Source of the DNA: Macrostomum lignano
Taxonomy: Eukaryota
NCBI GenBank assembly: GCA_002269645.1
Contig: NIVC01003582.1
Location: 25,753 to 89,752, forward strand
Direction of reading: 5' to 3'
Length of the DNA: 64,000 bases
Shown here: piece after piece, positions 2,818 to 60,280 of the stretch
Layout of the letters: each line of letters begins with the position of its first letter
How positions within the stretch are numbered: position 1 is the stretch's first letter
Translations under genes and position numbers: made by a program
The notes under the pieces: generated by a model
What the model was told of the DNA's origin: nothing
Databases searched by the model: none
Seen by the model: only the letters and a program-made list of their open reading frames with translations

Positions 2818-5800
2818 TCACACAGCCTGACCGGTGTCGGCATGCTGCCTCCGAGAGCCAGTCCTGTTGCAGCACAGCAGAGCCCAAGGCCGGCTGGTCT
2901 CGCGCACCAAATCGTCCAGCATCATGCAGAGAGCCGAGGCCAGCAGCAGCGCCGCGGCTGTCCAACCCAACGCGTAGCCGTAGCCGTAGCGGTGCGACTG
3001 AAACAGCAGCTTCTGCACGGCGTACGGGTAGATGCCCAAGGCCACTGTGGCCGACAGGGCTGCAATCAAAGCGAGCGCGAGGCAGAGTGAGATTTTGGCT
3101 CCTATTGTCAAGTACGACGTACCAAATACAAATGTACTTTTAGTACAGGTTGACAATTATTCATGGAAATACAAATTTCTAATAGTGATTATAACAATAA
3201 AAGATCAATGTCAGAAGCTTCAAATTCTAGCGTTTCTTATAATTGGCCTAGCGTTTGCCTTGGTCTGGGCTGCGGGTCTACTGGCTCAAGATGTATTCAA
3301 TGGATTAAAAGCACACAGGCAGGCGCTAAATAGGCATAAAACTAAGATTAATATTCTCAGTCCTTAGCAGTTGCCCCAGATGGGTTATTCAGTATTGACG
3401 AATGACAAGCATGATGCACGATTTCAATCTAGCTACCATTTCGTCTGAAAGACACAAAACACCCGGCCAAGGCTACTTAACTATAGCCGCTCATAAATTA
3501 TAACTGAGCTCTTTCCTTACCGGCTACAAAGAAGATCTCGCCAGCAGAGTGGAAGTAGTACATCTTCTTTGGCAGATAGCTGATACAGAGGCCCACTGAG
3601 GCGAGGCCGGTGCCCAGCCCGGCGAACAGAATGGCAAACAGCAACAGACCGATGGACGCCTTCTGCCAGTCTGGAGAAATTGTGAGGTTTTGTCGAGTGA
3701 TAAATACGACCGAGCGTTAATGTTTTTCCGCAGCAGAAAGAGTTCATGAGCCTTGCTTAAAGTGCAACGTCGCGTATCGCATATCGGACAGGTGCCAAGA
3801 GCCGGAGAGCTGCAGCAACGGTGCGCAGGTTTGTCCAACATGATTAATTCAGCGCCCTTCTTTTCTGCCGTGACAGCAGACGGGAAACTGGCTCTGCTCT
3901 GCGTGAGGGGCAGCGCGCCACGGCTCACAGGAAAGGCTGGCGGAGACCCGGTGCGTGTGTTTGTGCTCACAGAGGAAATTAGGACTGTGCAGCAGGATCC
4001 CCAGGGGGATGGAAGAAAGACCAAATAGATGGCAAAGAATATGCTTAGTTGTAGTCCAGGCTGATTTAACTGCAAAGCAGGCACTTTTTGTGCATTTAGA
4101 AGCAGACAGATTTACGGTGCTTTGTAATTCACATCGTTTTGTTGTCATACATCGTTTGGAAATAGATCTGAGCGGATGAGGAAAGGGCGAGTCTGATGTG
4201 GAGAGTGCTGGAAGAGATTGGAATAAAAATAACTATGAATTTCACTCACAGGAAGATGGTGAGTAGAGAATGCAGAGTAGGACTCACGAGTGTCAGGCTG
4301 AGTAGAGAATGCAGAGTAGGACTCACGAGTGTCAGGCTGAGTAGAGAATGCAGAGTAGGACTCACGAGTGTCAGGCTGAGTAGAGAATGCAGAGTAGGAC
4401 TCACGAGTGTCAGGCTGAGTAGAGAATGCAGAGTAGGACTCACGAGTGTCAGGCTGAGTAGATAATGCAGAGTGGACTCTAAGGTGTGGAAGGGCTCTAT
4501 GGTTTAATCTAACATCTAACAAACTACCTTGCAGCCGCAGTTTCCCGAAGCCGCTGCAGCCAGCTCTCGGCGGGACGCTGTGATTTCCTGGTTGCAGAGT
4601 CGCCACATACGAGCTCGGAGAGTTCGGGCACACGTCCCACAAGCTGACCCAACCTCTGCTACTCTCGCGCCAATGCCAGTGCGCCCCCGGTGCCACCGCA
4701 GCTCCCAACAGGGCGAGAGAGGCGCCTCCAAGCAAGGCGCCAAGGCAGCGCCAAGCCAAACGGCGCCGCTCTTGGGCGCCGGCGGCTTCGCTGTGTGGCC
4801 GGCGCTGTTCGTAGATTCCGACGCTGTCGGGGACGCGGAAGCTGACGAAACTCTTCAGCGTCTTTAGCTGCATCGCGAGGCCGCTCTGCCGCTGTTGGTA
4901 CACTTTCACTGTCTGGCACTCTGCTGAACCGCCAGTTCCGACAATCTGTCACTCTGTCACTTTGTCACTCTGTCACTCTGTCACTCAACAACTCAATCGT
5001 AAAGCATCTAGTGAAGAATGGACCAACTCAAGCTGACAGTCTCGCTGATCAAAGCTGAGCGACTCTTTACAGAGAGAAGGCAGGGGCAGAATTAAATGCA
5101 AGTAACCAAAAGAACGGCAGAGAGAGAGGGAAGGAGAGGGGGCGAGTAGAACAGGAATGGCAAGTGAATTTGGACTGAGAGCAGCCAATCGAGGGATGGG
5201 GGGCGAGGAGATGCGGCTCCCAGCTTCCGCAGCCATGCTCTAGTTTCCTCGTCTCCCCTTCTCCTCTTCTCCCATCTTCCTCTGTTAGGCTTATGGCCTC
5301 AGTTTTTTTGAGTAGCCACGGCAATGCCAGTTAAAGAGGGAAGCATAGAAAAGCTGGGGTGTGAGCACAGTTGTTCGCAGCTGTGGCAATTCCTGTCTCT
5401 CTTTCTTTGCCCGCTTGTCTTTTTTCTGCGTGAGCGTTTTTCTCGTTGTACCGCAAGGAGGAGGGGGCTGGCTCTGATGCATTGCTAGAGTCCCTTCTGG
5501 ACTGCCTGCCCACCTGGCTCCATGCATTTGTCGAATTAATTTGATGCTGCTGGGATGCTGGTGTGGTCTGTCTCTTTGCAGCTTCCATCTCAACATCTGT
5601 CTGTCTCTTGATGAAGCATTGCAAACCACGTGAATTTGGTAGTTAGTTCAGTTGGTGATAAGCTATAACTTAATACTTCTAAAAATTCATGGACCGCGGG
5701 CAGAAAGCTGCATCTAATTTGCATTAAATTTTAGTTGCGAACGAGTGCATGAGCACTGAGTTTATGAGCGCCAGCAGCATTTTATAATCATTTATCCCTT

Positions 5801-8800
5801 TTTCTTCCCTGTCTCACTCGCATCAACTTCGATCCCCAATACCGCCTCCCTCTTCTGCTCCTCAAAATAAACGCCTGCTCATGATAAATGAGGCCCTCCA
5901 ATGTCATTAAAAACCAGCAGAGCTCTCACCCCTTCCATCGGTGTGAGAGTCTGTTGAGCCGAAATTGCCAACACAGGTGTCATTGAGCTGATAGCAGGTC
6001 TGCCACAGGCCGGAGCGAGCCAGAGTGCTATTATCTGCGCGTGTGTCATTGGCCAATTTGTGTTTTGTTAGACATACGGCTACACCGGAATAAAATAAAG
6101 CTTTCAAATAATTATAAAACATCTCTAGCTATACTACTACTACCGATAATAAAGTAGCACGTTTGGTACGCCACGCGGAGAATATGCAAAGCCGTAGCTT
6201 AGTTACGAGAAAGATGATGCCGGATAATGTGTACTTTTGCCTAGTTTCGCTAGCTTGTGGAGAAAATATTGTCAGTGTAAAACAGCTCGCATTTGGTTTG
6301 GCTAGAACCCAGGTGATTGAGTAGAACCCAGGTGATTGAGTAGAACCCAGGCGATTAAGTAGAACCCACGTGATTGAGTAGAACCCAGGTGATTGAGTAG
6401 AACCCAGCTGATTGAGTAGAACCCAGCTGATTGAGTAGAACCCAGGTGATTGACTAGAACCATGCAGGTGATTGACTAGAACCCAGGTGATTGACTAGAA
6501 CCATGCAGGTGATTGACTAGAACCCAGGTAATTGACTAGAACCCAGGTGATTGACTAGAACCCAGGTGATTGAGTAGAACCCAGGTGATTGACTGGAACC
6601 CAAGTGATTGACTAGAACCCAGGTGATTGACTAGAACCATGCAGGTGATTGACTAGAACCCAGGTGATTGACTAGAACCCAGGTGATTGACTAGAACCCA
6701 GGTGATTGACTAGAACCCAGGTGATTGAGTAGAACCCAGGTGATTGAGTAGAACCCAGGTGATTGAGTAGAACCCAGGTGATTGAGTAGAACTTAGGTGA
6801 TTGAATAGGGATAGCTACATGTATGCCTATAAAGTCAAAGGTACTGGGTCTGAGCTAATTCTGAGTATTTAGAAGTGAAATTAAACGATTTTAACCTGCA
6901 ACCTGCACGCGCTTGCCTTAAGTAAGTGCTCAAAAAATTAGAGGTGCATAGTTGTACCGTTACTGTTTTAAATAGTGCTTAAATCACCGGTTTGGGAGGT
7001 TGCCATTATTATCAATACTACAATGCACCCTCTTTGACAGCATTACGCTCGTACTTATGCTTTGATGTGACGGTTCGTTGGTTTGTTAGCTGGGTACCTG
7101 TGTTCGTTTTATTGATTAGCTTTATTCAATTAGACTTTATTCTGCTAACTTGGTCACTTAACTTTATTCAATTCCAAACTTCTATGTACTCTGTAAACCA
7201 ATGCGTACTCTGTGCAATTCAGTGTACATCATTGCGCTAGCCTTGCCTCGCCCCTTAAGTCTCTCCACTTACTCAGCCATATAATGCACCAGTGAAGTTC
7301 AATATTCACAATATTTAACTTATTGCACTCGATCTGTGCTTCGTCAAGCAACTTAGACTGTTGCACTACTGCAAATATATCGCAAGAATTTATACTCGCT
7401 TAAACAACATTCGATTCCTGACTTTCGCGTCACGTCATGCTTGAAGCTTAATCCCCTTTTGTTGCAATAAATTTGGAGACAGACTCATAGAACCCTTTGG
7501 ACTATTTTTCACCATAGCAGACCCTTAGTCTATCTGTTTGATCTAGGGGTGTTTAGGACGGCAATTCAGGACGGGTTCGAACTCCGAACCCCGACCCGAA
7601 CATTTTTTCAAACCCCGAACCCGGTACCAAAACCTGACGAAGCAATTGCTATCATTAACCCCCCATCATTAGCAGTGGCTGTGACTTCTCGTGACAATTT
7701 TCTGGTCACTTAGGGGGCCTCACCGGCTCTTATTCGATCCGAGCTGCATCAAACTAATCCAGCATCATCCGATTTCGTGCCCTCTTCGTCCACTTCAAAT
7801 TTCCGGGAGTCCACGATGAAGATCTTGCTAATTCTCTGAGTCCCGCGAGGTGACTGAGGAGCCGGCCAGCTAGGGGGGGGGGTTCTCCTGCTCCATTTTC
7901 CTCCCTTCCTCAATTCCTCAACTCGAAAATGCTCGACAGGGAGAAAATTGAGACGGTAAGGCACTGGGAGGGCTCTTGATTCGCCTAATGCAATCGGACA
8001 TTCTTTCGTGCATTTAGGCCATGCATTTAAACAGGTTAAATCGTGCATCAATTTTCTGCTTTACAATGTCTTCTACTTCTGAAGCTGGATCGCTGCTTAA
8101 AATACAATACAGTTCATGTTCGTTGCTTTCAATTAACTTAACCTTGTACTTTTGTTGGACAATTTTTTTGCTTAGCCACCTGTAGAAGCCCTCTTGCAAC
8201 TTCGCAAAGTTACCGCTAAAAGCCAATGGCTACGAGAGTACCAATGAAGGTGATTCCTACCAAACAGCACGGTTCAGCATGCAGGCGGTTAAACAGACCT
8301 AAAAATCTGAAATTATAATTAAATTTCAAGTGTTCCCAAAACTCTAAATATCTCTAGCGCTTAAAATTTACCGAATTTTTCCTCCTTTGAAAGTTCAGGC
8401 TGTGAGACCCATATAATAATTAATTGATTACACCTGCCCCAATTGAACCAGATGTGCAACCAGATGTCAGCGGGCGCATCTGAAGACTGCGTACGGCTGT
8501 TCAGTCCAAGGACTGGGGGGTCGCCACACACCCTCAATTACCCCAACTATTGCTGCAAGGCACCCATTTTGCAGCTGGGTGAACTGAAGCAATGCTTAAG
8601 TGTCTTGCTCAAGGAAACAAATTATTCCAGGGGGAATCTTCACGTCGTGAGTCCGACGCTTTAACAACTGGACTGAAACACCCCAAAACCAAGAGAGACC
8701 CCCAAACGCGTAGTCCTGAAGGCCTTTTAAGCAACTTACCCAGCGAGTGGTAGGACCAGGAGGCGGTGGACAAGCAGATCAACAGGCAGGGAGCTGCCAG

Positions 8801-9604
8801 TGTCGCCATTGCCGCAGCAACCAAGCGACTGCGCACAAAAGTCGGATGCTCCCAGTAGGCTCGCAGCCGGTTCCACTGCGTGTTGCTCAACTCCTGCGCG
8901 AAGCTGCCAGCGTAGCTCACCTTCGACCGTCGGCCTCCGATGCCAATTAATTCGCCTCCACCAGCTGCTCGACTCCGTCGCTGCTGCTGCTGTTGTCGCA
9001 GGTGCAGTCGCTGTTTCTCCGGAGCCATCAGGGCCGCGCATTCTTGGCGCGCTTTCAATATCGGCGTTGTCAGACGCGCTTCTTCCTCGGCCTCGGCCTG
9101 AGCGACAGCCGCTGCAGCTGCCACTGCTGCCTCTGCTGCCGCGGATGCTTCAACTCGGGGCTCCTCTTTTATCCGGAGCTGCCGCCGCTGCTGCAGAGAG
9201 GCGCGTCGTTGGCGAGACCAGCGTGACCAGGCCGATGTGCCGTCGTCTGGATCCTCGGCCGCCGACACAGCACCGGCGGATTCAACACCCGACGAACGCA
9301 GTTGGAGTGTTGAAGGTCGACCACTAGGAGATGGCGGTGGCTGCTGCTGCTGCTGCGATGGCGGCTCCTCCTCGGAGGCACCACGAATCGGCGAAGCTGA
9401 CGGAGAAATCTCTACGCTGCTGCCAAGGCCCGTGTCGCCGCTGTTCTGCTGCCATGGTAGCGCAGCAGAAGCGGCACCGGTTGCCGCGTCGCCTTTGAAG
9501 CCGCTGCGCGTTCGAAAACGTCTCTGCTGGGTTCGCGCGACTGAGGCCTGCGGCACCCCCAGGAGTCCGGCTGTGTCCTCAGTCATGGCGTCCTGAATAG
9601 GCAT
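2818..9604 (-). CDS. PMP22/EMP/claudin-superfamily tetraspan protein, long isoform (4 coding exons)
   Basis: Exon 9604-8740 has a long N-terminus plus TM1 (LVAAAMATLAAPCLLICLSTASW; donor G|GTAAGT). Exon 6034 (or 6079)-5930 has the SGLWQTC..C motif (donor G|GTGAGA). Exon 3670-3521 reads DWQKASIGLLLFAILFAG..KKMYYFHSAGEIFFVA. Exon 3059-2818 reads ALSATVALGIYP..YGYGYALGW..QAV*. All three introns are phase 1 and GT-AG. Confidence 0.8.
4259..4465. repeat. 39-bp minisatellite, about 5 copies (intronic)
   Basis: The unit is GAGTAGAGAATGCAGAGTAGGACTCACGAGTGTCAGGCT. Confidence 0.95.
4528..4873 (-). CDS. Alternative first coding exon (TM1+ECL1) of the claudin-like gene, splicing to exon 3670-3521
   Basis: From ATG 4873 it reads MQLKTLK..LAWRCLGALLGGASLALLGAAVAPGAHWHWRESSRGWVSLWDVC..GCSGFGKLRLQ. 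The phase-1 donor CAAG|GTAGTT at 4528/4527 is compatible with the 3670 acceptor. Confidence 0.7.
6302..6803. repeat. 19-bp minisatellite with 21-bp variants, about 25 copies (intronic)
   Basis: The unit is TAGAACCCAGGTGATTGAG/C; variant units contain CATGCAGG. Confidence 0.95.
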
Positions 9605-12032
9605 TTAGATTTCATTAATAGATACGTGCGTTCTAGAGGGCTGCGACCATCCTTGTCTTCCCAGAAAATGACATCACACCGCTATGATACGAAAAGCAAT
9701 AGATGTAGGCTGAAAAGAGCCAGCTATTGGAAAAAATTTTTAAAACTGTCCTTTTTAGGCATTCCCGGGCGGATTTATGTCAATAAAAATCGATACCTTT
9801 ATCGTTTGAATTCGTGCAAATCAATGTCGGTCTCTGGATGCCCACAAATTTAAAAGCATTCTGCAGAACTTGTATGGTCAGTGCAGCGTTTTTTGTCTTA
9901 AATCCAATAGCTGCGGAAGGAATGGAAAATATCAATGAATAAATATGGATCCATAAGTACAGGCAGTCCGTAGATCGACAGAGGACTCTCATGAAACAAT
10001 TTTAATTTAGTGCAATAAGGTTGGATTCAAAAAAGAAAAAGAACAACAATCCTGTTTATTGCACTGCACTCGATAAAGGACCGGCGTCGAGACGATGTGG
10101 TGAATGCTTTTTATGTCCAGAATCGCGTGACAATTGAGCAGTGTCCCTTGCCAGCACTCTGTCTGGAGGCGTCAAGTCAAGGAGGCGGATTTGCCACCAG
10201 CTCAGCTAGGCCCGAATCGGGTGAACAGGCGGCCCACTCGATGGGACAGTACATCACTCCAGACCTTCGCTCGCTGCCGACCTCAAACTTGCTGCCTTCC
10301 TCTGAGAGCCTCCATCTCTCCCTCCCCAACTTTATCTTTTTCTTCCTTCCGTCTTCCAGTTCGGGCGGCGGGTGAGCAACGGATGCGGGGAAGAAATGCG
10401 AAGTAAAGAGCTGAGATTAAAGCAGTGGGCGACACAGCAGGCAACAGGCAGGCTGCACAGGCAAAAGCGGCTAGAGAATTCCAATGCATAAATCACGAAA
10501 GGACAGTGCAGTAGCAGCATCTGCCTCTCTCTATTCCCCAAGTTTTTATCAACCAACAGGCGACTAAAAAGTAGAATTCAGCAGGGGGATGGACAGCAGA
10601 GAAGCCCAGTCGATGCACTTATACTAACGGAAAAAGCTGAATTTACGGCTGTTCATAGAGCCAGGTGAAGAATATCTTAATAACAAATAAACAGAGTTCG
10701 TCTGGCTGTCAATCAGGCTGAACAGAGTCGCTGAGATGCGACGGATTTTAAACGGAACTGAAGTGGAGAGAGCTAAAAAACCGAAGCAAACAGAAGCTAT
10801 AGGAAGAGAAATGGAGAGCCGTGAAGGAGGGGAGAATTGAGCTTCTTCTTTAAGCCTCATCTGGCCGATCAATAACAGCCGGGATTGAACCCGACAAGAG
10901 TGCACCAGCACTTCAGCAGATTTTTCGAATTGTTTCTGTCACTTTTCAAGATAATGTCGATTATTGTCTGGGGCAGTTGGAGATTCAAGTTCCTACCTTA
11001 GCACATTACGCTCGTAGAATAGAAGGCCGTCTTTTACCTGGGTATAAATTATTTTTCTGCTAGGTAAGCCTACTGATCAATACTGTCCTTTAAAGTTGCG
11101 CCTCTCCCGCAATGAGTTGCCAGACGCGGAAGCTGGAGTCCTACCTTTCAGCGCTCCTCACCATTGTCTCCTTTCAACAGGGTTAAGAAACTGCATGGGA
11201 AGGCATTGCGTCTTCCAGTATCTATTTTAGTCAGAGACTCTTGTACGCTACCTGCCTTTGTCGCAGCTCTCAGGCCAGCACTAGCATGCAAGCTTGCTGC
11301 CTTCTGTGCGTGTCTGCCTGGTGGGTGTTCGTCACTCTCTAAGGAAAAAATGCTCAGAATTCTTGTGTAGCTCTCAAAGAAATGCCTCTTCTATGCCTTG
11401 TTGCCTTCATCGATTTTTTTGCTGTTTTGTTCGTGTAGCGTCGAAGCAAAAAGACGGGAGGCAGCGGGCGGTCGGGCTGAGGAAGAGTTGGGGGGGACTT
11501 GGGGTCCTGACCTGAGGTGAAGGCGAATTCCGCTGTTAATGAGGCCGGCGATGACAATGCGAGACTTGTTTTCTTCGTTAAGTTTTAATGGCTGCATCAT
11601 TTCAATGGAGTTTTAATATGAAAATTGCATGCATTTTTATACACTTTTATACACTAAAAATTATATTGCCATGTTCAGTCTCCGCTTGAGCTGCACTCAA
11701 GGACTACAGTAAGTTACCATGGAAATAGGAAGCTACACTGTTTATACTTTATTTTCGGGCCCAATTACTCTGTTTTTTTATGTCGATCTAAAAGTTTTTT
11801 GCATTCTTATTTTTAAATCTGCGGGAGGCTGGAAAAAAACAAAAGTAGCTACCTGTGCCTTCTCTCAGCTTTACAGTTTTTTTAAAAAGCCAGCAAACAG
11901 ACCTACCTTCAGGGACTTTTATGTGTTCTTCGGATGGTGAACGTCAGGGGCGCCGCCACCGGGGGGGGGGACAGGGGAGACATGTCCCCCCCAGTTGAAG
12001 CTATGGGGGGGACATACCAATGCATACCAATG

Positions 12033-18238: not shown

Positions 18239-19032
18239 TACTAATTGTCAATTAAGCAAAAATCAAATAAAGCATGCTGGGAAAATAGGTTTGGAGCAGT
18301 TTTTTGGCTAGATTTTGCTTTCATATTTGACACAGTCCCAAGAGAGGACCCAACGTTTATATTGTAAAACCAGTTTGTCACATTCCTAAAAGTAACATAG
18401 GATTTCGACGAGGTACCTCTGGTGTCAAATTTTACTGTGTGTTGGTGAAAAAACTTAACATGTGCCGAAAAAGCAATCGATAATTTATTCAGCTTTAAAA
18501 AAACTTGCCTCGATAAAATGATATACGTATACGGATTTGGAGAAAGTGCTGTCTCTGAGCTATTGATAAAAATTAGCTTGATGAAGAGAAAAGCATTGAG
18601 GAATGGCAATATGCGCTGTCATCCCGGATGTAAAATTTCCGACCATTTTATGACCCATTGTAGTTAAGGGTAATATTAATTGAAAGTTATCATAATTGTC
18701 GCAAGCGAAAGTTTTTGCTACAATTTTAGCGGCTACAGCTGCAGTACAGCAGCGACTGATTTATGGCCTTGTATCGATACCGAGAGATGAACCCTGACAG
18801 AAAAACTTGGCGCCGCTCGGCCCTAAAACAGTCCATCCGGCTGCCTGAAATCCCAGGCATTCCAATGGACCCTGTAGTTTTACGGTCCTCGATCTGCGGG
18901 CGGGGCGGTCATAGGCTGCCGTCCTGAAGCAGAGCATAACCAACAGTGCTCGAGAGCATAAAAGTCCCACTGCCAAGTCGATCTCAAACTGGTCCGGACA
19001 GGCTACCCGTAAAAGAGTCGAAAGCCTTAGAG

Positions 19033-20847
19033 ATGGTCCTTAAAGAAGACCTGGAATTCTTCTGCAACTCCACCTCTCTCCGAGGAGTTGCTAAGGCGTC
19101 GAAAGCGCCGACCCGGCCACTGAGAGCCATTTGGACAATTTACATTTTGGCCATGGCTGCCGCTCTGCTCACCTGCGTCTGCTTCATAGTTTCCGACTAC
19201 TCTCAGTACAAGACTATCATACAGTCCACGCTGGTGATCAACGACATGTCCAGTCACAGCTACCCTGCGCTCACCTTCTGCAATCACTACCCGTTCCAAG
19301 AGTCGGCGTACAAACTTTGGGAAAGCGGAGCGGTCCTGTCGCCAACTAATTATTCGAAAATGCTGCGCCGGCAGGCTTTTGAAGCGTTTAACAATAGCGA
19401 CTATTCGAGCATGGAGAACTTGCTGGTCTACGACACCAAGCGGGTGTATTATCAGACCCTGCCACACGAGCACGCTCTCAATGTCAGCTTCACCATACCT
19501 CAGGTGTTCATCTTCTGCATCCGTGGCCACGGCCAACAAATGGACATAACGGAGGCCAGCAGCTGCGAATTCATCATTAAGAGCATAAGTATTCCGTCAT
19601 TTTTCACCTGCTTCCAAGTGCAAATCAACCAGCCGCACGATTGGATCACGCTAATTTTGCACGTTGTCAAGGGTCCACAGAGCAGCTTTGAGGAGGCCTT
19701 TGTTCAGGACACGTTCGAACAGGCTCACGGACTTCGATTGCAGGTCAAAATAGAAAGCTGTCTCTGACTACCTTTATTATAATCGCTAGGAAATCTATAA
19801 AAATGTATTTTAGAGAGATGAATGCAATCAAGCTTTTGTAAGTTAGACTAGCTGCGCTGTTCAATGTGAACCACTCGTCGACTCAATAAAAACATTTCAA
19901 CCTAACAGGTCCACGAAAACGACACTTATCCGAACCCGATGGCCAAAGGCATCCACATCGAGCCGGGAAAACTGGTCGAGATTAACTACCGACACGTACG
20001 CTGGCACGAGGCCGACACTCCGCGCGACGTTTGCCTTCACCCGCAGGTCATGAAGTCTCGCCGAGTCAGCGACCTCGGTCAGGACTTCTCCTATTCGGCC
20101 GACGGCTGCGTCAAGGCAGCCATCGGGCGTCGGGTCCTGCGCCAGTGCGGCTGCTATTATGCCGAGTATCTGCGCGAGGCGCCCCCCAACGCTACGCACC
20201 CGTACTGCGGTGACATGCGTTTGGGACTAAAGGCTATTCACCACAACCTCCAGTGCCTCAGCCGCATTAATTTTACTGAGCTTAAGATCGGGCTGAGCTC
20301 CAGCGAATGCGTAATGCCGTGCTCCTCTTCAAAATTCGACACCTTCACCTCGCAGACGGTGTGGAAGGCTACCGACTGGCAGCTTTATTGGCTACTTAAA
20401 CAATCGCAGAGTTTTTCCCGCCTACGGGAAAGTCAGAGACTGCCGCAGGGGGCGGAGCGGGACAAGCAGTTCCAGTTAGCCAAGGACGGTCTGAAGCGGC
20501 TGCTCACTCGGCCTCGTCTGTCCAACGTCTCGACCAACGACTTCAAGCTGGACTTCGATTCGCACAGCGATGAGTTTGCCTACGTGACAGTGCGCCGCCA
20601 GAGTTGCAACACGATGCTCAAAGTCGAGGCCCAGTCACTGAACTTTAGCGCTTTAATGAGCCAAATTGGTGGATTGTGCAGCTTGTTTCTCGGCCTCACC
20701 TGCGCTGTTGTTGTGGAGCTGGTCGAGGTGGCTCTCATGCACCGGGTGCACAGAAAACAGAAGGCGGCTGCATCTGCGGCTGCAGCAGCTGCTATTGAGG
20801 ATGTCGAGATGAAGTGCGAACGCGAAAATGATAATCCAGCAAAATAG
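19033..20847 (+). CDS. DEG/ENaC (amiloride-sensitive sodium channel) family subunit, 2 exons, about 549 aa
   Basis: Exons are 19033-19743 (donor CAG|GTCAAA) and 19909-20847 (acceptor AACAG|), phase 0. Motifs: FCNSTSLRG pre-TM1, TM1, YPALTFCN, GLRLQ|VHE..P..GIHIEPG, Cys-rich thumb (CGC..C..C..C..PC), and TM2 SQIGGLCSLFLGLTCAVVVELVE. Confidence 0.9.
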
Positions 20848-41922: not shown

Positions 41923-43871
41923 ACTAAACGCACTTCGGCGCTTCCTCGGTGTCGTCGGTTTCTACCGTCGATTCGTTCCCAACTTTGCCGACCGCATCTG
42001 TCCGCTGCAAGACCTACTCACTGCATCACTACAGTCAGCAGGAAACTTCCAATGGACAGAGCAGCATCAGAAATCTTTCGAAAACATCAAACAAGCTCTC
42101 TCAGAGAGACTACTGCTGCATCATCCGGACCCCAACTGTACTGCGTACCACCTGTACACTGATGCCTCAGCCGACTGTGTTGGTGCCGTTCTGCATCAAA
42201 CCTCTTCAACGGAACGTCACCTCTTGGCATGTTCAGCAAAAAGTTGTCGTCATCTCAAAGGACGTACAGCACGTTCGACCGAGAACTACTCGCGGCGTAC
42301 CTGGCAGTGTTGCACTTCCGCAACCTCATTGAAGGACTGAGCGTGACCTTGTTCACCGATCATAAACCACTAGCTCAGGCCTTCCACGCCAATCGCACCA
42401 CTACGTCAGATCGCAATCAGCGCTACTTGACCGTCTTGTCCGAGTACGTGGCAGATGTCCAGTACATTCGCGGTGCAGACAACGTAATAGCTGATGCCCT
42501 TTCTCGACTGCCTGACTTCCCAGTCAATGATCACGTGTCCAACATCGCAACAGTCGCTGTAGTCGCTGCCCCATCAAGCCAATTCCCTGTTGATCTGCCC
42601 AGTATCGCTGAAGCACAACGACCGGAGTCGTTCTCACCTGCACCAAATATTCGATCGTATTCTCTGGACAAAGACGTCGTCGTTTGGTGTGAGACGTCAA
42701 CGCCGTATCCTCGCCCGATCATTCCGCCGTCTCTCCGCGACGCCGTAATTGCCTCCTTCCATCGACTTGGTCATTTCAGCTACCGTAAAACAGCAAAACT
42801 CATCACAGAACGTTACTTTTGGCCCGGAATGCGCAAGTCCATCAAGACCTCCTGCTGGAACTGCCAGGACTGCCAACGGAGTAAAGTCACTCGCTACACT
42901 GTCTCCCCGCAACAGGCCTTCGCATTACCATCAAATCGCATTGAGGCGGTACACATCGATATTGTGGGACCACTTCCACCAGCTAATGCTACCACCTTTG
43001 GCCACCAGTCTGCCCGCTACCTTCTCACGATGGTCGACCGCTCGACTGGCTGGCTAGAAGCTACACCACTGGAATCAATAACCGCGGAAGTAGTCGCCCA
43101 TGCATTCGTCTCGTCTTGGGTCTCGCGCTACGGAGTGCCACTGTATGTAATCACTGATCGGGGGCGCCAGTTCGAATCAGAATTCTTTCACTCGTTCTCG
43201 TCATCAATTGGTTTTCATCGATTACGCACAACGGCCTACCACCCTCAAACCAATGGCAAGGTCGAGCGAGCCCATCGCACCCTGAAGACGATGCTACGTG
43301 CTCGAGGCAATGACTGGCTGACAGACCTACCTGTGGCTCTCCTCGCGATGCACGTCGCACCTGACGACCAAGGAATATCACCGTTCACCAGGGTTACCGG
43401 CGAGCTTCCGATGGTTCCGCGCATTCTAACTTCTGAACCACTCGCCCCAACGGACATTCGGACACGGCTGCAGGAACTGCTGACAGAGTTACCGAGTCCA
43501 CACGCGAAGACGCACGAACCACGGAGCTACGTGTACCCAAGGACCTGGAAATGGCTGAATTCGTCTGGGTTCGGGTCGATCGCGTGCGGTCGCCGCTCGA
43601 GGCGCCGTACTCAGGGCCGTATCGCGTGAAACAGCGAACTGACAAGTTCTTCGTTATTTTCCTACCGTCAGGCAACACCGAATCTGTCTCTATCGATCGC
43701 CTCAAGCCGGCGCGACTTTCGCTTCCGAAGTCGGCTGTTCAGCCGCCCGCGAACTCGCTGCCGGAAAAAGCCGCCAAACCAGAAGAACCGAGGGACTCAT
43801 CACCTCCTAGAGCGACCTCTAGCGGCCGCCGAGTCCAATTCCAACGCCATAATGATTACATTTTTAATTAA
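41915..43871 (+). pseudogene. pol: RT thumb, RNase H and integrase (HHCC, DDE, GPY/F), with two frameshifts
   Basis: Motifs: LRRFLGVVGFYRRF, LYTDAS, YSTFDRELLA, TDHKPL, NVIADALSR, H..GH..C..CQ, HIDIVGP, TDRGRQF, YHPQTNGKVER and APYSGPYRV. Confidence 0.92.
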
Positions 43872-45266: not shown

Positions 45267-46373
45267 TCAACCAAAACGATCGTCGGCCCGAATGAGTCGA
45301 TGCATTTCAATGGCTTCGTTGTTGGCACCGGCGTCTCCGTCGCAGAGCTGCCGATCGCATCGGCGATGGGACGGGGCGCGCCTCTGTTGCTGGAAGCACC
45401 AACTGCTACCCACCGATCGGCTGTACCGGACAAGCAGGAAGAAGTTCAGGCAGGAGTCAATGGGCTGAAAGACGCCGCCCCAGTTTGTAAAGTGTTCCAG
45501 CAGGCTCAGCGTGTTCGAGTTGAGGCCAGGACCGCTTAGCCCATGCAGCACGTAGCCCGCAGTGATCACGTAGCATAGAGCGAAAGGAAACTCAAGCAGA
45601 ACGAATCCGCCCGCCATTAGTAGGACCATCTTGCTGGCCCGCTTGCTACTTCTGTGATAGGCGAAGCGAACCCGCAGGCTGTACGCGATGCGACCGGTAA
45701 GCACCAGGATACTCAAGCCCGGGAAAAGCACGCCGAAACAGGCGAAGCTCAGGTAGCGCCGCAATTCCTCTCGCACCGCCGCAAACTCGGCCGAAGTAAA
45801 ATTTCCCACTATAAAGTCGCCGTTCTCGCGATCGTCGACGACGCTGTTGCTGAGATTGACGCCGCCAAGCACTGCAGTGGCAAGCATCGACAGACTAACA
45901 AGCACGGCAATCTGAGTGCGGGTTCCAGCTGCCGCCACAGCGATCGATGGACGAAGGAGCGCAGCGGCGCGGTAGAGCGTCATACACAGCAGCCAATGGT
46001 TGCGCACCGTCTGTACACCGTGCAGTAAGAGGCCAGCGCGAGGTGACAACAAGCGCTGGCAGAGAAGATAGCCAGCCAGGAGGCAGTTCAGCGCCACTTC
46101 CAGTCCAGTGAGGGCTGGCACTCCGCAAGCTCGCTCTCGGAGAGTGGTAGGCAACGGTGTACTGCAGTCATGCTGGTTACACCGCCTTCTAAGTCCTTTG
46201 CCGGCGGTGAGCAATGCAGCCAGAGCAGCTGCGTTCATGCCGCATGCCAGACAACTCAAACCAAGTGTAATACTAAAGGCGGCCACCTCTGCTGGTCCCG
46301 CGCCTGCTCCACCGGCCGCGCCGTCAGTAAAGTTTTTGCTGTCGCTGACAGTCTTGCCGCGAATTTGATCCAT
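45267..46373 (-). CDS. Class A (rhodopsin-like) peptide-type GPCR, single exon, 368 aa
   Basis: Seven hydrophobic segments are present. TM3 ends MTLYRAAALLRP (DRY equivalent), TM5 has LFPGLSIL, TM6 has FVLLEFP, and TM7 has IDSCLNFFL (Srw/FMRFamide-receptor style). Confidence 0.7.
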   Translation of the reverse strand: MDQIRGKTVSDSKNFTDGAAGGAGAGPAEVAAFSITLGLSCLACGMNAAALAALLTAGKGLRRRCNQHDCSTPLPTTLRERACGVPALTGLEVALNCLLAGYLLCQRLLSPRAGLLLHGVQTVRNHWLLCMTLYRAAALLRPSIAVAAAGTRTQIAVLVSLSMLATAVLGGVNLSNSVVDDRENGDFIVGNFTSAEFAAVREELRRYLSFACFGVLFPGLSILVLTGRIAYSLRVRFAYHRSSKRASKMVLLMAGGFVLLEFPFALCYVITAGYVLHGLSGPGLNSNTLSLLEHFTNWGGVFQPIDSCLNFFLLVRYSRSVGSSWCFQQQRRAPSHRRCDRQLCDGDAGANNEAIEMHRLIRADDRFG

Positions 46374-54595: not shown

Positions 54596-57500
54596 ATGGA
54601 AGCGGAGGACAGCTCGAACGGACGCCCAGATCGAACCTGCTTAGTGTGCTCAAAAAGCTTCAAGTACCCCAGTCAGCTGCGATTGCACCAGAGCGTGCAC
54701 TCGCTTGCGCGTCCGTTTCCTTGCGATGAGTGCGGGCGCACTTTTAAATACGCGTCGACGCTGAGCGAGCACAAGCTCATTCACGCCGCCGACTCGAAGC
54801 CGTTCGTGTGCGGCGTCTGCGGACGGGGCTTTGCTTATCGCGGCAACTACCGGGCCCACGCTGCAGTGCACGCCGATATTGACAAGCGGGAGCGCCGGTT
54901 CCGATGCGATCAGTGTGTACTTTTTATTTTAATATGACCGGCTAATAGCCGGCTATTGTGCGGTAGGTTTGATTAGAGTTTGTTGTTATGCCGTGTCAGC
55001 TATTAGATTTGTCATATGAGATTTGCCAGTCACGAGAATTATCAGCTATGTCTTGAGATTTGTCAGTCATGAGAATTATCAGCTATGAGATTTGTTGTCT
55101 ATAAGATCTGTCAGCTATGAGATGCGTTAGCTATGAGATTTGTCAGCTATGAGATTTGTCAGCTATGGGATTTGTCAGCTATGAGATGTGTTAGCTATGG
55201 ATTTGTCAGCTATAAAATTTGTCAGCTATGAGATGTGTTAGCTATGAGATTTGTCAGCTATGAGATTTGTCAGCTATGAGATTTGTCAGCTATGAGATTT
55301 GTCAGCTATGAGATGTGTCAGCTATTAGATGTGTCAGCTATTAGATTTACATATGAGATTTGTCAGTCACAAGAATTATCAGCTATGACTTGAGATTTGT
55401 CAGTCATGAGAATTATCAGCTATGAGATTTGTTGTCTATAAGATCTGTCAGCTATGAGATTTGTCAGCTATAAAATTTGTCAGCTATGAGATGTGTTAAC
55501 TATGAGATTTGTCAGCTATGAGATTTGTCAGCTATAAGATTTGTCAGCTATGAGATGTGTCAGCTATTAGATTTACATATGAGATTTGTCAGTCACAAGA
55601 ATTATCAGCTATGACTTGAGATTTGTCAGTCATGAGAATTATCAGCTATGAGATTTGTTGTCTATGAGATCTGTCAGCTATGAGATGTGTTAGCTGTGAG
55701 ATTTGTCAGCTATAAAATTTGTCAGCTATGAGATGTGTTAGCTATGAGATTTGTCAGCTATGAGATTTGTCAGCTATGAGATTTGTCAGCTATTAGATTT
55801 ACATATGAGATTTGTCAGTCACAAGAATTATCAGCTATGACTTGAGATTTGTCAGTCATGAGAATTATCAGCTATGAGATTTGTTGTCTATAAGATCTGT
55901 CAGCTATGAGATTTGTCAGCTATAAAATTTGTCAGCTATGAGATGTGTTAACTATGAGATTTGTCAGCTATGAGATTTGTCAGCTATAAGATTTGTCAGC
56001 TATGAGATGTGTCAGCTATTAGATTTACATATGAGATTTGTCAGTCACAAGAATTATCAGCTATGACTTGAGATTTGTCAGTCATGAGAATTATCAGCTA
56101 TGAGATTTGTTGTCTATGAGATCTGTCAGCTATGAGATGTGTTAGCTGTGAGATTTGTCAGCTATAAAATTTGTCAGCTATGAGATGTGTTAGCTATGAG
56201 ATTTGTCAGCTATGAGATTTGTCAGCTATGAGATTTGTCAGCTATTAGATTTACATATGAGATTTGTCAGTCACAAGAATTATCAGCTATGACTTGAGAT
56301 TTGTCAGTCATGAGAATTATCAGCTATGAGATTTGTTGTCTATAAGATCTGTCAGCTATGAGATTTGTCAGCTATAAAATTTGTCAGCTATGAGATGTGT
56401 TAACTATGAGATTTGTCAGCTATGAGATTTGTCAGCTATAAGATTTGTCAGCTATGAGATGTGTCAGCTATTAGATTTACATATGAGATTTGTCAGTCAC
56501 AAGAATTATCAGCTATGACTTGAGATTTGTCAGTCATGAGAATTATCAGCTATGAGATTTGTTGTCTATAAGATCTGTCAGCTATGAGATGCGTTAGCTA
56601 TGAGATTTGTCAGCTATGAGATTTGTCAGCTATGGGATTTGTCAGCTATGAGATGTGTTAGCTATGAGATTTGTCAGCTATAAAATTTGTCAGCTATGAG
56701 ATGTGTTAGCTATGAGATTTGTCAGCTATGAGATTTGTCAGCTATGAGATTTGTCAGCTATAAGATTTGTCAGCTATGAGATGTGTCAGCCATTAGATTT
56801 ACATATGAGATTTGTCAGTCACAAGAATTATCAGCTTTGACTTGAGATTTGTCAGTCATGAGAATTATCAGCTATGAGATTTGTTGTCTATAAGATCTGT
56901 CAGCTATGAGATGCGTTAGCTATGAGATTTGTCAGCTATGAGATTTGTCAGCTATGGGATTTGTCAGCTATGAGATGTCAGCTATGAGATGTCAGCTATG
57001 AGATGTCAGCTATAAGAGTTTTCAGCAATGAGATTTTGCCAGCTCTGCGATCTGTCAAAGATTTGCAAGCAGCACTAGTAAAATGTGTCAGTCCTGAGTC
57101 ATGAAAGGAGGCATGAAAGTGGGCCCAGGACGGACCAACCTAGGCCTCTTTTTAAGTTTGATCGGACTTAATTAATTAAAAAATTATTCTATTCTCATAA
57201 AAGTAAGCTGAAAGTCCACTGTTCCTTGGTTCAGTCCAGCATCCCAACCCAAATTGTATTGCGACATTTGCACCGCCACCAACAGGTGCCCAGCCGCTTA
57301 TTTGCACCGGTCTCACCTGCACGAGCACATCGCGGCGAAGCATTTGCAGTTGCTACAATCGGCTAGCCAGAATCCGGAAGCGGAAGTGGCTGAATCTCAG
57401 CCGGATGCAGCTGCGGAGCCGGCTGCCGAAGCACCCAAAGGCCTGTTTGAATGCGGCATGTGCGGCAAGGCGTACAGGTACCGGAACTCGCTGCTGGAGC

Positions 57501-59635
57501 ATCAGCGAGGTCACCGGAAACAGAGGCGGCTGCGGCGGGTGAGGCTTGACCAGATTTCAGATATGAGATTCTTAGATATGAGATGTGTCAGTTTAGATAT
57601 GAGATTTGTCAGCTTAGATATGATATTTGTCAGCTTGATACCAAAGTGTCAGCTTGATACCAGAATGTCAGCATGGATACCAGAATGTCAGCATAGATAC
57701 CAGAATGTCAGCATAGATACCAAAATGTCAGCATAAATACCAGAATGTCAGCATAGATACCAGAATGTCAGCATAGATACCAGAATGTCAGCAAGAATGT
57801 CAGCATAGATGCAAGAATGTCAGCATAGATACCAGAATGTCAGCATAGATACCAGAATATCAGCATAGATACCAGAATGTCAGCATACATACCAGAATGT
57901 CAGCATAGATACCAGAATGTCAGCATAGATACCAGAATGTCAGCATAGATACCAGAATGTCAGCATACATACCAGAATGTCAGCATAGATACCAGAATGT
58001 CAGCAAGAATGTCAGCATAGATACCAGAATGTCAGCATAGATACCAGAATGTCAGCAAGAATGTCAGCATAGATACCAGAATGTCAGCAAGAATGTCAGC
58101 ATAGATACCATTATGTAAAGGTACTGTCTAATACACCAGATCAAATATCTTCATTCCCTCCGCAGCCGCTGAAGTGCACCGTCTGCCACGTAATCTTTGA
58201 TGACGTTTTCAAGCTGCGTCAACACGTCGAACTGGACGACGCGCCGGAGAATGCCCGCCGTCACGTGTGCTGCAAGTGCGGGCGCGCCTTCTTGCGCCGC
58301 TGCTATCTGGCGCTGCACGTGGCCGGCGCGCACAAATTCAAACGACGCCACAACTGCCAGCTGTGCGGCAAGTCGTTTCTATTGTTAAAATGCCTCCGCC
58401 AGCACCAGGCCTGGGTGCATGCCGACGGTCTGTGCGGAACTGTGCGGACTGCGGCCGGCAGATCAGAGGCGGCGCCGCTGGCATGCGCGCCCACGCTGCC
58501 ACTCACGCTTGGCGACTGCGGCTGCAGCAGGAAGAGGACAAGGCTGCCGAGGCTTGGTCAGTGTGATGTCACTCGGGCTCGCCTCTGACTGACTGACTCA
58601 CTGACTGACACACTGACTGACTCACTGACTGACATACTGACTCACTGACTCACTGACTCACTGACTGACTAACTGACTGACATACTGACTGACATACTGA
58701 CTGACTGACTCACTGACTGACTCACTGACTGACACACTGACTGACTCACTGACTGACATACTGACTCACTGACTGACTGACTGACTCACTGACTCACTGA
58801 CTGACATACTGACTCACTGACTGACTCACTGACTCACTGACTGACATACTGACTCACTGACTCACTGACTGACTCACTGATTGACTCACTGACTGACACA
58901 CTGACTCACTGGCTGACATACTGACTCACTGACTGACATACTGACTCACTGACTCACTCACTCACTGACTCACTCACTCACTCACTCACTCACTCTGACT
59001 GACTGAGTCACCAACTCACCCCATCTCTCTCGAACGCATTTCAGCCGAACTCGCCAGCAAGAGAAACTGTTTAAAAAGCAATTAAGGGAGAAGAAGAAGA
59101 CAAACAAGAAGAAAAGCACAGAAAAGGAGAACGAAACGCCCGTGTCGCGATTTCGTTGCGACGCCTGCTTCAAGGAGTTTCCTCGACTGTTCAATCTGCA
59201 GCGCCATCAGCGTCGGGTTCACGACCGGCCTCCTGCCCGCGGCGACGGCAGCGCGCAGCAACGCCGTCGCTCATCGTCCTCCAATAGCGAGGCAAGACCC
59301 TTCAAGTGCGAAGCTTGTGGCAAAGATTTCCGTTGGGAGCGCAATTTGAAGGCTCACTCGATTGCACTGCATGGCGAAGGCGATCGGCCGGTTGAGAACT
59401 CATTTCAATGCGGCCAGTGCGACAAGGTCTTCCCCACGAGGGCGAGGCTGGACACTCACAGCCGGTCGCATTACAGCGCTCGGCCATTCGGCTGCAACCA
59501 GTGCGACGCGCCTACAAGCACAAGAAGAACCTGGTGGCCCACGTTCTGCGGTGCCACAGTGGGCTGGATCGGCAGGGTGATGCCGCCGGTGACTCCAGCG
59601 ACTCCACTTCGGAGGGGAACTCGGATGATGAGTGA
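54596..59635 (+). CDS. Multi-C2H2 zinc-finger protein (about 13 fingers), 4 exons, with two 1-nt frameshifts
   Basis: Exons are 54596-54912, 57286-57538, 58166-58556 and 59045-59635, all GT-AG and phase compatible. Fingers include CLVC..H..H, CDEC, CGVC, CDQ|C, CGMC, CCKC, CQLC, CADC, CDAC, CEAC, CGQC and CNQC. Indels lie near 58425 and 59507. Confidence 0.8.
55000..57030. repeat. 16-bp satellite organised into 226-bp higher-order repeats
   Basis: The monomer is TGTCAGCTATGAGATT. The marker TTTACATATGAG occurs at 55346, 55572, 55798, 56024, 56250, 56476 and 56798. Confidence 0.95.
57560..58110. repeat. 20-bp minisatellite preceded by 16/17-bp-type units
   Basis: The unit is ATACCAGAATGTCAGCATAG. 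Confidence 0.95.
58587..59010. repeat. (ACTG)n/(ACTC)n compound microsatellite (intronic)
   Basis: CTGA/CTCA tetramers with CATA and CACA variants. Confidence 0.95.
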
Positions 59636-60280
59636 CTCTGAGTGTTTTAGTGAATCCGAGTGTGACTTTGAGTGTTTTAGTGAATCCGAGTGTGACTTTG
59701 AGTGTTTTAGTGAATCCGAGTGTGACTTTGAGTGTTTTAGTGAATCCGAGTGTGACTTTAGGTGTTTTAGTGAATCCGAGTGTGACTGGGTGTTTTGGTG
59801 GATCCGAGTGTGACTTTGAGTGTTTTAGTGAATCCGAGTGTGACTTTGAGTGTTTTAGTGAATCGAGTGTGACTTTGAGTGTTTTAGTGAATCCGAGTGT
59901 GACTTTGAGTGTTTTAGTAAATCCGAGTGTGACACTGAGTTGAGTGAATCCGAGTGTGACTCTGAGTGTTTTAGTGAATCCGAGTGTGACTCTGAGTGTT
60001 TTAGTGAATCCGAGTGTGACTCTGAGTGTTTTAGTGAATCCGAGTGTGACTCTGAGTGTTTAGTGAATCCGAGTGTGACTTTGAGTGTTTTACTGAATCC
60101 GAGTGTGACTTTGAGTGTTTTAGTGAATCCGAGTGTGACTTTGAGTGTTTTAGTGAATCCGAGTGTGACTTTGAGTGTTTTAGTGAATCCGAGTGTGACT
60201 TTGAGTGTTTTAGTGAATCCGAGTGTGACTTTGAGTGTTTTAGTGAATCCGAGTGTGACTCTGAGTTGAGTGAATCCGGT
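59631..60280. repeat. 30-bp minisatellite, about 21 copies
   Basis: The unit is TTTAGTGAATCCGAGTGTGACTTTGAGTGT. Confidence 0.95.

What the first reader, a model, noticed from the sequence alone, without database searches (positions are those of the whole stretch)
2818..9604. Claudin-like gene with two interchangeable TM1+first-extracellular-loop modules
Seen: two unrelated upstream modules each encode TM1 plus a W..(G/S)LW..C..C loop. One is exons 9604-8740 with 6034-5930; the other is the single exon 4873-4528. Both end in phase-1 donors that fit the same acceptor at 3670 and give ..DWQKASIG.. Known: ECL1 determines claudin pore selectivity and adhesion specificity, and vertebrate claudin-10a/b and claudin-18.1/.2 use alternative first exons in this way. 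Inference: this is an independent invertebrate case of promoter-switched ECL1 diversification for septate junctions.
Basis: partly seen in the sequence, partly recalled or inferred. Interest (0 to 1): 0.7.

Follow-up and report, generated by a model that had tools for sequence, protein, structure and literature searches.

The report
Claudin-superfamily gene with two swappable front ends
This is a real four-helix membrane-protein gene of the claudin/PMP22/TMEM47 superfamily with two alternative front ends, each supplying its own start codon, first membrane helix and first outer loop, and the same layout occurs in a brachiopod and a bryozoan, so it is ancient; its expression and function remain untested.

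Summary
On the minus strand, exons A1 (9604-8740) plus A2 (6034-5930), or the single exon B (4873-4528), join in phase 1 to C1 (3670-3521) and C2 (3059-2818). This gives complete ORFs of 453 aa and 245 aa. Both pass Pfam PF00822 and both model as four-helix claudin folds.

Both front ends are conserved elsewhere. The A type occurs in nemerteans, molluscs, annelids, a brachiopod and flatworms. The B type occurs in Macrostomum, Bugula and several spliced mRNA contigs.

The order A, then B, then one shared core also occurs in the Lingula and Bugula loci. It does not occur in the Owenia or Schistosoma loci.

The modules are not "unrelated". Their profiles align (hhalign 97%, E 9e-11), so they are diverged duplicates.

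The family is uncharacterised and was found only in spiralians. Its nearest named relatives are TMEM47/PERP-like proteins, not classical claudins. The septate-junction role, and promoter switching as opposed to trans-splicing, are therefore untested. No transcript data exist for this organism.

Verdict: a real gene structure that parallels CLDN10 and CLDN18. It is a new variant of a known kind and of moderate interest.

The parts
8740..9604 (-). Exon A1. It carries the start codon, a cytoplasmic N-terminus of about 255 aa with conserved motifs (SAWSRWSRQRRAS, TPILKARQE, YWEHPTFVRSR), TM1 and the first residues of ECL1 (…SWSYHSL). Donor G|gtaagt, phase 1.
   Evidence: Sequence and translation. 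tblastn with Lineus P0004 residues 177-318 hits 9235-8741, E 1e-11. Aligned with A-type proteins. HMM built without the window: E 5.5e-11. The intron position just after the ECL1 Trp is shared with read-through products P0116 and P0133.
5930..6034 (-). Exon A2, 105 nt, phase 1 at both ends. It encodes the rest of ECL1: DNSTLARSGLWQTCYQLNDTCVGNFGSTDSHTDGR.
   Evidence: M. lignano P0046 residues 214-239 hit 6038-5961 at 62% identity. HMM built without the window: E 1.8e-4.
4528..4873 (-). Exon B, the alternative single-exon front end. It has its own ATG, a short conserved N-terminus (MQLKTLKSFVSFRVPD…QERRRLAWRC), TM1 and ECL1 (HW…SLWDVC…GC). Donor G|gtagtt, phase 1.
   Evidence: M. lignano P0001 residues 96-184 hit 4870-4628, E 4e-10. 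Aligned with B-type proteins. HMM built without the window: E 9.7e-7.
3521..3670 (-). Common exon C1: TM2, the short intracellular loop and the start of TM3 (DWQKASIG…YYFHSAGEIFFVA). Acceptor ctccag|, entered and left in phase 1.
   Evidence: tblastn hits from every family member tested, 54-69% identity.
2818..3059 (-). Common exon C2: the rest of TM3, ECL2, TM4 and the cytoplasmic tail, which ends …GQAV. Stop codon TGA at 2820-2818.
   Evidence: tblastn hits. The C-terminal Val is invariant in alignments A3 and A4.
4874..5150 (-). Region upstream of exon B, presumed B 5'UTR and promoter. It has in-frame stops before the ATG, and a long polypyrimidine tract followed by AG at about 5065/5063 that looks like a 3' splice site.
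   Evidence: The function is inferred only.
4260..4479 (-). 39-nt tandem repeat in the B-C1 intron. The B reading frame stays open through it. Each of five units carries CTC|GTGAGT in phase 1, so these are possible alternative donors that would lengthen ECL1.
   Evidence: Use of these donors is untested.

Best explanation
One gene on the minus strand (9604 to 2818) encodes a four-helix membrane protein of the PMP22/EMP/MP20/claudin superfamily. It belongs to an uncharacterised family found so far only in spiralian animals.

The gene has two mutually exclusive 5' modules. Module A (exons A1 and A2) supplies a conserved cytoplasmic N-terminus of about 255 aa, TM1 and ECL1. Module B (one exon) supplies a short, differently conserved N-terminus, its own TM1 and its own ECL1.

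Each module has its own start codon. Each ends in a phase-1 donor that fits the single acceptor of the shared exons C1 and C2, which encode TM2 to TM4 and a tail ending in Val.

Exon B has no in-frame way to receive module A, so it is skipped when transcription starts at A. It is used when the mRNA 5' end forms upstream of B, from an internal promoter or possibly by spliced-leader trans-splicing. The outcome is two proteins with the same TM2-TM4 body but a different N-terminal domain, first helix and first outer loop.

The two modules are old duplicates of one TM1-ECL1 unit, and the arrangement predates the split of flatworms, brachiopods and bryozoans.

Shown: exon anatomy, reading frames, family membership, conservation of both modules, and the same architecture in two other phyla. 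Inferred: that both are expressed here, how the switch is made, and what the loop difference does. Partner or adhesion specificity is the most likely effect.
For: - Exons, phases and complete ORFs of 453 and 245 aa.
- PF00822 scores are 49.1 bits (A isoform) and 40.0 bits (B isoform) against a cut-off of 26.7. The core alone scores 26.9, so each module adds to the match.
- AlphaFold models show four long helices plus short ECL1 strands: pLDDT 72.8 and 74.8, pTM 0.68 and 0.72. The best PDB matches are claudin-15, -4 and -3, TARPs and MP20.
- A-type homologues share three N-terminal motifs and the TM1-ECL1 part. B-type homologues share M(K)xFxKF…E..R.WRPFR.
- HMMs built without the window recover all three module exons as the top hits.
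- Lingula locus L002 has, in order, A1 10001-11575, A2 57107-57205, B1 about 67255-67459, B2 about 79316-79420, C1 80488-80634 and C2 82395-82613, with phase-1 junctions.
- Bugula locus L003 has an A N-terminal exon (KARKE motif) at 5359-5526, an A1-type TM1 exon at about 6680-6870, then B1 10001-10195, B2 10468-10584, then C1 and C2.
- Spliced B-type mRNA contigs L006, L007 and L008 have their own 5'UTRs, an in-frame stop 2-7 codons before the ATG, and no A-type sequence. The A-type mRNA contig L001 has no B sequence.
- The A and B module profiles are homologous.
- There is only one core exon set in the window.
Against: - No transcript evidence exists for this organism.
- In Macrostomum lignano, the closest species found, the A-type (P0046) and B-type (P0001) predicted proteins have different C-terminal exons, so there they come from different loci.
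- The Owenia and Schistosoma A-type genes have no detectable B module.
- Public models in Lingula (A1-A2-B2-C1-C2) and Dreissena (A N-terminus fused to the B module) combine parts of both modules, so the exclusive-use rule is not proven.
Confidence: 0.75

Rival explanations
1. Only one front end is still in use here. The other is a well-preserved relic of the ancestral two-module gene, or is expressed at negligible level.
For: Some lineages have lost one module from the gene: the Owenia and Schistosoma loci have only A. No RNA data exist for this organism.
Against: Both modules keep intact ORFs, canonical GT/AG sites in the correct phase, and the lineage-wide conserved motifs. A relic would be expected to accumulate stops or lose the donor.
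Confidence: 0.1
2. There are two overlapping genes. Exon B with C1 and C2 is a compact B-type gene nested in the last intron of a larger A-type gene, whose own core exons lie beyond coordinate 1 of the window.
For: In M. lignano the A-type (P0046) and B-type (P0001) predictions end in different C-terminal exons. The window core is closer to P0001 at 58.6% identity. Only 2.8 kb lies downstream of the stop codon in the window.
Against: No second core was found in the 64 kb. In Lingula and Bugula a single core follows both modules. The phase match of A2 to C1 and the clean ...DGR-DWQKA... junction resemble the junction in other A-type proteins, for example ...TDGR-DWQNA... in P0003 and P0005.
Confidence: 0.08
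3. The gene is built as described, but the protein is not a junctional, pore-forming claudin. It may act like TMEM47/VAB-9/PERP (an adhesion-complex organiser) or like TARP/gamma subunits (a PDZ-anchored auxiliary subunit of a channel or receptor). The swapped loop and N-terminus would then change the partner rather than paracellular ion selectivity.
For: The next-nearest families in the exhaustive search are named TMEM47-like or PERP-like. Fold matches to TARP gamma-5/7/2/8 and to MP20 are as good as those to claudins. The C-terminal Val is invariant across the family, as in PDZ ligands; the PDZ link rests on my own knowledge. The long conserved cytoplasmic N-terminus of module A has no counterpart in classical claudins. 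The pfam00822 superfamily has several functionally distinct clades (PMC3879130).
Against: Nothing here excludes a septate-junction role. Claudin-15 and claudin-4 are the top structural hits, though by small margins.
Confidence: 0.5

Closest known systems
Vertebrate CLDN10 (10a/10b) and CLDN18 (18.1/18.2) alternative first exons
   Same: Two alternative 5' exons, each with its own start codon, encode the N-terminus, TM1 and ECL1 and join common exons encoding the rest of a four-helix claudin-fold protein (PMC7642450, PMC9153115, compared).
   Different: This is a different and distant family: PF00822 but not a claudin clade. One module is split into two exons. It also brings a conserved cytoplasmic domain of about 255 aa that the other module lacks. 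The arrangement is shared across spiralian phyla. Tissue-specific promoter use is documented in vertebrates but is untested here.
TMEM47 / VAB-9 / PERP clade of the PF00822 superfamily
   Same: It is the next-nearest named group in the exhaustive profile search, with E values of about 1e-15 to 1e-6. It shares the four helices, the ECL1 W…GLW…C…C motif and the small size of the core.
   Different: TMEM47-like proteins lack the A-type N-terminal motifs, the B-type N-terminal motif, the YYFHSAGEIFF motif in TM3 and the …V C-terminus. They score far below true family members, which reach E below 1e-30.
TARP / voltage-gated calcium-channel gamma subunits and lens MP20
   Same: The overall fold is the same (Foldseek TM-score normalised to target 0.65-0.75). 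The cytoplasmic tail ends in Val, as in the TARP PDZ ligand (own knowledge).
   Different: Sequence similarity is marginal: PDB phmmer gives E 1.4 for gamma-1 and 1.5 for MP20. No evidence of a receptor or channel partner exists.
Drosophila septate-junction claudins (Sinuous, Megatrachea, Kune-kune)
   Same: They belong to the same superfamily and are invertebrate proteins (PMC2172325 listed; PMC3879130).
   Different: No specific similarity was detected. None appeared among the hits that were named. The junctional role was not tested.

Membership tests
PMP22/EMP/MP20/claudin superfamily (Pfam PF00822) | Score above the curated gathering threshold of the PF00822 profile | tested here: met
   The A isoform scores 49.1 bits and the B isoform 40.0 bits against a cut-off of 26.7. 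The core alone scores 26.9.
PMP22/EMP/MP20/claudin superfamily (Pfam PF00822) | Four transmembrane helices with a large first extracellular loop carrying W…G/S-L-W…C…C | tested here: met
   The AlphaFold models have four long helices: H29-60, H116-144, H148-184 and H192-220 in the B isoform, and the equivalent in A. The motif is read directly in both modules.
PMP22/EMP/MP20/claudin superfamily (Pfam PF00822) | Structural similarity to solved claudin-fold proteins | tested here: met
   Foldseek against the PDB: claudin-15 4p79 E 3e-5 with target-normalised TM-score 0.75; claudin-4 7kp4 E 9e-5; TARPs and MP20 similar. ECL1 confidence is low (pLDDT below 50 in part).
Classical claudins (strand-forming junction proteins) | Groups with claudins rather than with other PF00822 clades | tested here: not met
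   The exhaustive profile search returns only members of this spiralian family among the strong hits that were read, and the weaker hits looked up are TMEM47/PERP-like proteins. No named claudin was among the hits looked up.
Classical claudins (strand-forming junction proteins) | Localises to and forms tight- or septate-junction strands and sets paracellular selectivity | not testable with these tools
   This needs localisation and barrier assays.
Alternative-first-exon claudin-type genes (CLDN10/CLDN18 design) | Two 5' modules, each with its own ATG, TM1 and ECL1, that splice in frame to the same downstream exon | tested here: met
   both donors are phase 1 and there is a single acceptor at 3670.
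Alternative-first-exon claudin-type genes (CLDN10/CLDN18 design) | Both modules are maintained as coding sequence | tested here: met
   Homologues of each module occur in other phyla. HMMs built without the window detect them. The same layout occurs in Lingula and Bugula.
Alternative-first-exon claudin-type genes (CLDN10/CLDN18 design) | Both mRNAs are made, from separate transcription starts | not testable with these tools
   No RNA data for this organism were available. The only indirect support is A-only and B-only mRNA contigs in other species.

The most novel reading that the evidence does not exclude
An uncharacterised, spiralian-restricted tetraspan family related to TMEM47 has kept a duplicated TM1-ECL1 cassette, with two separate mRNA 5' ends, for over half a billion years. 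The switch would change both the outer loop and the presence of a conserved cytoplasmic domain of about 255 aa. This would amount to two differently regulated surface-recognition proteins from one gene, arrived at independently of vertebrate CLDN10 and CLDN18. In this genome a 39-nt repeat carrying in-phase donors might add a further, length-variable loop series.
Probability: 0.45. Interest if true: 0.55.

Novelty: new variant of a known kind. Interest (0 to 1): 0.45.

Why it matters
Swapping TM1 and ECL1 through alternative first exons is how vertebrates obtain functionally opposite claudin-10 isoforms and the tissue-specific claudin-18 isoforms.

The same design appears here in a distant branch of the superfamily. 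It is retained in a flatworm-like genome, a brachiopod and a bryozoan. This suggests that cassette exchange of the first loop is a recurrent way to diversify claudin-fold proteins.

It also flags a conserved but unnamed spiralian protein family, with two recognisable N-terminal types, for functional study. A practical consequence is that current gene models in Lingula and Dreissena probably mis-join the cassettes.

Tried and rejected
- Word-indexed homologue searches were swamped by low-complexity transmembrane words and gave only 2-4 hits each. The exhaustive profile search was what revealed the family.
- The Lineus, Nucella and Dreissena proteins were not on record as genes, so NCBI isoform pairs could not be inspected.
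- I looked for an A-type and a B-type protein with identical cores, which would prove one gene. None was found among the representatives, probably because of clustering at 50% identity.
- I looked for B modules in Owenia and Schistosoma. None was found.
- Rfam found nothing in the window, so there was no RNA marker or organism clue.
- The literature searches returned no description of this family or of such isoforms in invertebrates.
- I considered and rejected a read-through or combined A+B protein for this window. Stops precede the B start codon in its own reading frame. By my own hand reading, not a tool result, a join of A2 to the acceptor-like site near 5065 reaches a stop.
Full report
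**Observation.**

- A1 (9604-8740) starts with ATG and ends G|gtaagt.
- A2 (6034-5930) follows cgcag| and ends G|gtgaga.
- B (4873-4528) starts with ATG, has in-frame stops a few codons upstream, and ends G|gtagtt.
- All three donors are phase 1.
- The only compatible acceptor is ctccag| at 3670. C1 (3670-3521) and C2 (3059-2818, TGA at 2820-2818) complete the reading frame.

The products are 453 aa (A1-A2-C1-C2) and 245 aa (B-C1-C2). Both joins make an Asp codon in front of WQKASIG. Both modules carry a hydrophobic helix followed by W…(G/S)LW..C…C.

**Is it more than chance?**
Both isoforms pass Pfam PF00822 (49.1 and 40.0 bits; cut-off 26.7). The shared core alone scores 26.9 bits, and module A alone scores 17.3 bits on profile positions 6-56. 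Each front end therefore adds real signal.

Module HMMs built only from other species pick A1 (E 5.5e-11), A2 (E 1.8e-4) and B (E 9.7e-7) as the top hits among 1,918 six-frame pieces of the window. tblastn with homologues hits the same exons and finds no second core in the 64 kb.

AlphaFold models of both isoforms give four long helices (pLDDT 72.8 and 74.8). Their best PDB matches are claudin-15, -4 and -3, TARP gamma subunits and MP20. The distal part of ECL1 is modelled with low confidence.

**The family.**
An exhaustive profile search of 1.84 billion representatives found only 223 proteins at E ≤ 0.001 and 15 at E ≤ 1e-30. The named strong hits are all spiralian and all "uncharacterized":

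- flatworms: Macrostomum, Schistosoma, Clonorchis, Spirometra, Cichlidogyrus
- nemerteans: Lineus, Tubulanus
- molluscs: Littorina, Nucella, Dreissena
- annelids: Owenia, Capitella
- the brachiopod Lingula, the bryozoan Bugula and the rotifer Brachionus

The weaker hits are named TMEM47-like or PERP-like. The family is therefore a distinct branch of the PF00822 superfamily, and its nearest named neighbours are in the VAB-9/TMEM47 clade rather than among the claudins. A review of the superfamily stresses that its clades do different things (PMC3879130).

**Two N-terminal types.**
Members fall into two types.

- A-type proteins have a long cytoplasmic N-terminus with three conserved motifs: SAWxxWSxxRRxS, TPxxKARQE and (F/Y)WEHxxF. 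The window's module A has all three.
- B-type proteins are short and start M(K)xFxKF…E..R.WRPFR. The window's module B aligns with them, best with Macrostomum lignano A0A1I8GV57.

Profile-profile comparison shows that the juxtamembrane, TM1 and ECL1 parts of A and B are homologous (97%, E 8.8e-11, 18% identity). They are diverged duplicates, not unrelated sequences.

**The architecture elsewhere.**
- **Lingula anatina.** The LOC106174080 locus (L002) contains, in order, A1, A2, a B1 exon (MKMKNFLKFKAREN…NRNWIEGE, gtaagt donor, phase 1), a B2 exon (…FQSGVFQVCETN…TEC…), then C1 and C2.
- **Bugula neritina.** Locus L003 has A-type exons about 3-5 kb upstream of B1, B2, C1 and C2.
- **Intron loss here.** In both species the B cassette is split by an intron soon after the ECL1 Trp, as the A cassette is in the window. 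This fits duplication of a two-exon unit and later intron loss in this genome's exon B.
- **Loci without B.** The Owenia and Schistosoma loci have A1, A2, C1 and C2 but no detectable B.
- **Macrostomum lignano.** The A-type and B-type predictions have different C-terminal exons. Duplication and loss have therefore also occurred.

**Transcripts.**
No RNA evidence for this organism was reachable.

Indirect support comes from other species. B-type mRNA contigs L006, L007 and L008 are spliced, have an in-frame stop 2-7 codons upstream of the ATG, and contain no A-type sequence. A-type contig L001 has no B sequence.

Two public gene models combine cassette parts. The Lingula model has A2 followed by B2. 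The Dreissena model has an A N-terminus fused to the B module. These are probably mis-joins, but they keep open the possibility of more complex splicing.

**Mechanism.**
The best-supported reading is mutually exclusive use of the two cassettes, decided by where the mRNA 5' end forms. Stops precede the B start codon in its own reading frame. By my own hand reading, a join of A2 to the acceptor-like site upstream of B also reaches a stop. Transcripts begun at A should therefore skip exon B.

A polypyrimidine tract followed by AG lies about 190 nt upstream of the B start codon. The B 5' end may therefore be formed by splicing from an upstream non-coding exon, or by spliced-leader trans-splicing, rather than directly at a promoter. 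This is inference.

The two products would share TM2-TM4 and the Val-ended tail. They would differ in N-terminal domain, TM1 and ECL1. What the loop does is unknown; adhesion or partner specificity is more defensible than pore selectivity.

**Verdict.**
Three points need correction:
- The design is ancient and shared across spiralian phyla.
- The modules are paralogous, not unrelated.
- The claudin/septate-junction function and the promoter switch are untested.

It parallels CLDN10 and CLDN18 (PMC7642450, PMC9153115) in a family that the literature searches did not find described.

Noticed in passing
window 4260-4479 (minus-strand gene, B-C1 intron): A 39-nt tandem repeat (5.7 copies) begins 49 nt after the exon B donor. 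The B reading frame stays open through it. Five units carry CTC|GTGAGT in phase 1 (exon ends 4444, 4405, 4366, 4327, 4288), the phase needed to join C1. Using these donors would add 28+13n residues to ECL1.
   Followed up: partly
window about 5063-5140: A long polypyrimidine tract followed by AG lies about 190 nt upstream of the exon B start codon. It looks like a 3' splice site and could serve an upstream non-coding exon or spliced-leader trans-splicing.
   Followed up: partly
window 8219-8353 (minus strand, A1-A2 intron): A short open piece reads RYLEFWEHLKFNYNFRFLGLF…CCLVGITFIGTLVAIGF. Its EFWEH..F closely matches the A-type juxtamembrane motif and is followed by a hydrophobic stretch. The A-module HMM gives E 0.015. 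It may be a decayed extra cassette or chance.
   Followed up: partly
window 6298-6808 and 2085-2671: A 19-nt minisatellite (26 copies) lies in the A1-A2 intron. A 51-nt repeat (11.7 copies) begins about 150 nt past the stop codon.
   Followed up: no
window 58585-59019, 59632-60266, 60916-61730, 62519-63977: A run of tandem arrays, including a 13-nt satellite GATCCCAGATCCC of about 116 copies. That satellite explains the GC-rich, skewed end of the window and the long ORFs on both strands there.
   Followed up: yes
window 42229-43629 (+): An ORF with RNase H, integrase zinc-binding and integrase core domains. It is a Ty3/gypsy-type retrotransposon pol fragment.
   Followed up: partly
window 18946-19767 and 19939-20847 (+): Two ORFs match the N- and C-terminal halves of the amiloride-sensitive sodium channel family PF00858. 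This is a neighbouring DEG/ENaC channel gene.
   Followed up: partly
window 45267-46373 (-): A 368-aa ORF gives a weak, sub-threshold match to rhodopsin-family 7TM receptors.
   Followed up: no
L002 (Lingula anatina LFEI02000514.1) 57107-57205 and about 79316-79420: RefSeq model XP_013410926.1 strings the A2 and B2 loop exons together, giving two G-L/V-F..C…C pieces in one protein. This is probably a mis-join of alternative cassettes. A related mRNA-derived protein (P0006) has only the A2-type piece.
   Followed up: partly
P0012 (Dreissena polymorpha XP_052285350.1): The model joins the A-type cytoplasmic N-terminus, up to FWEHKMF, directly to a complete B module (MKSFLKFK…). Either it is a real third combination or a prediction artefact. 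The locus could not be fetched.
   Followed up: partly
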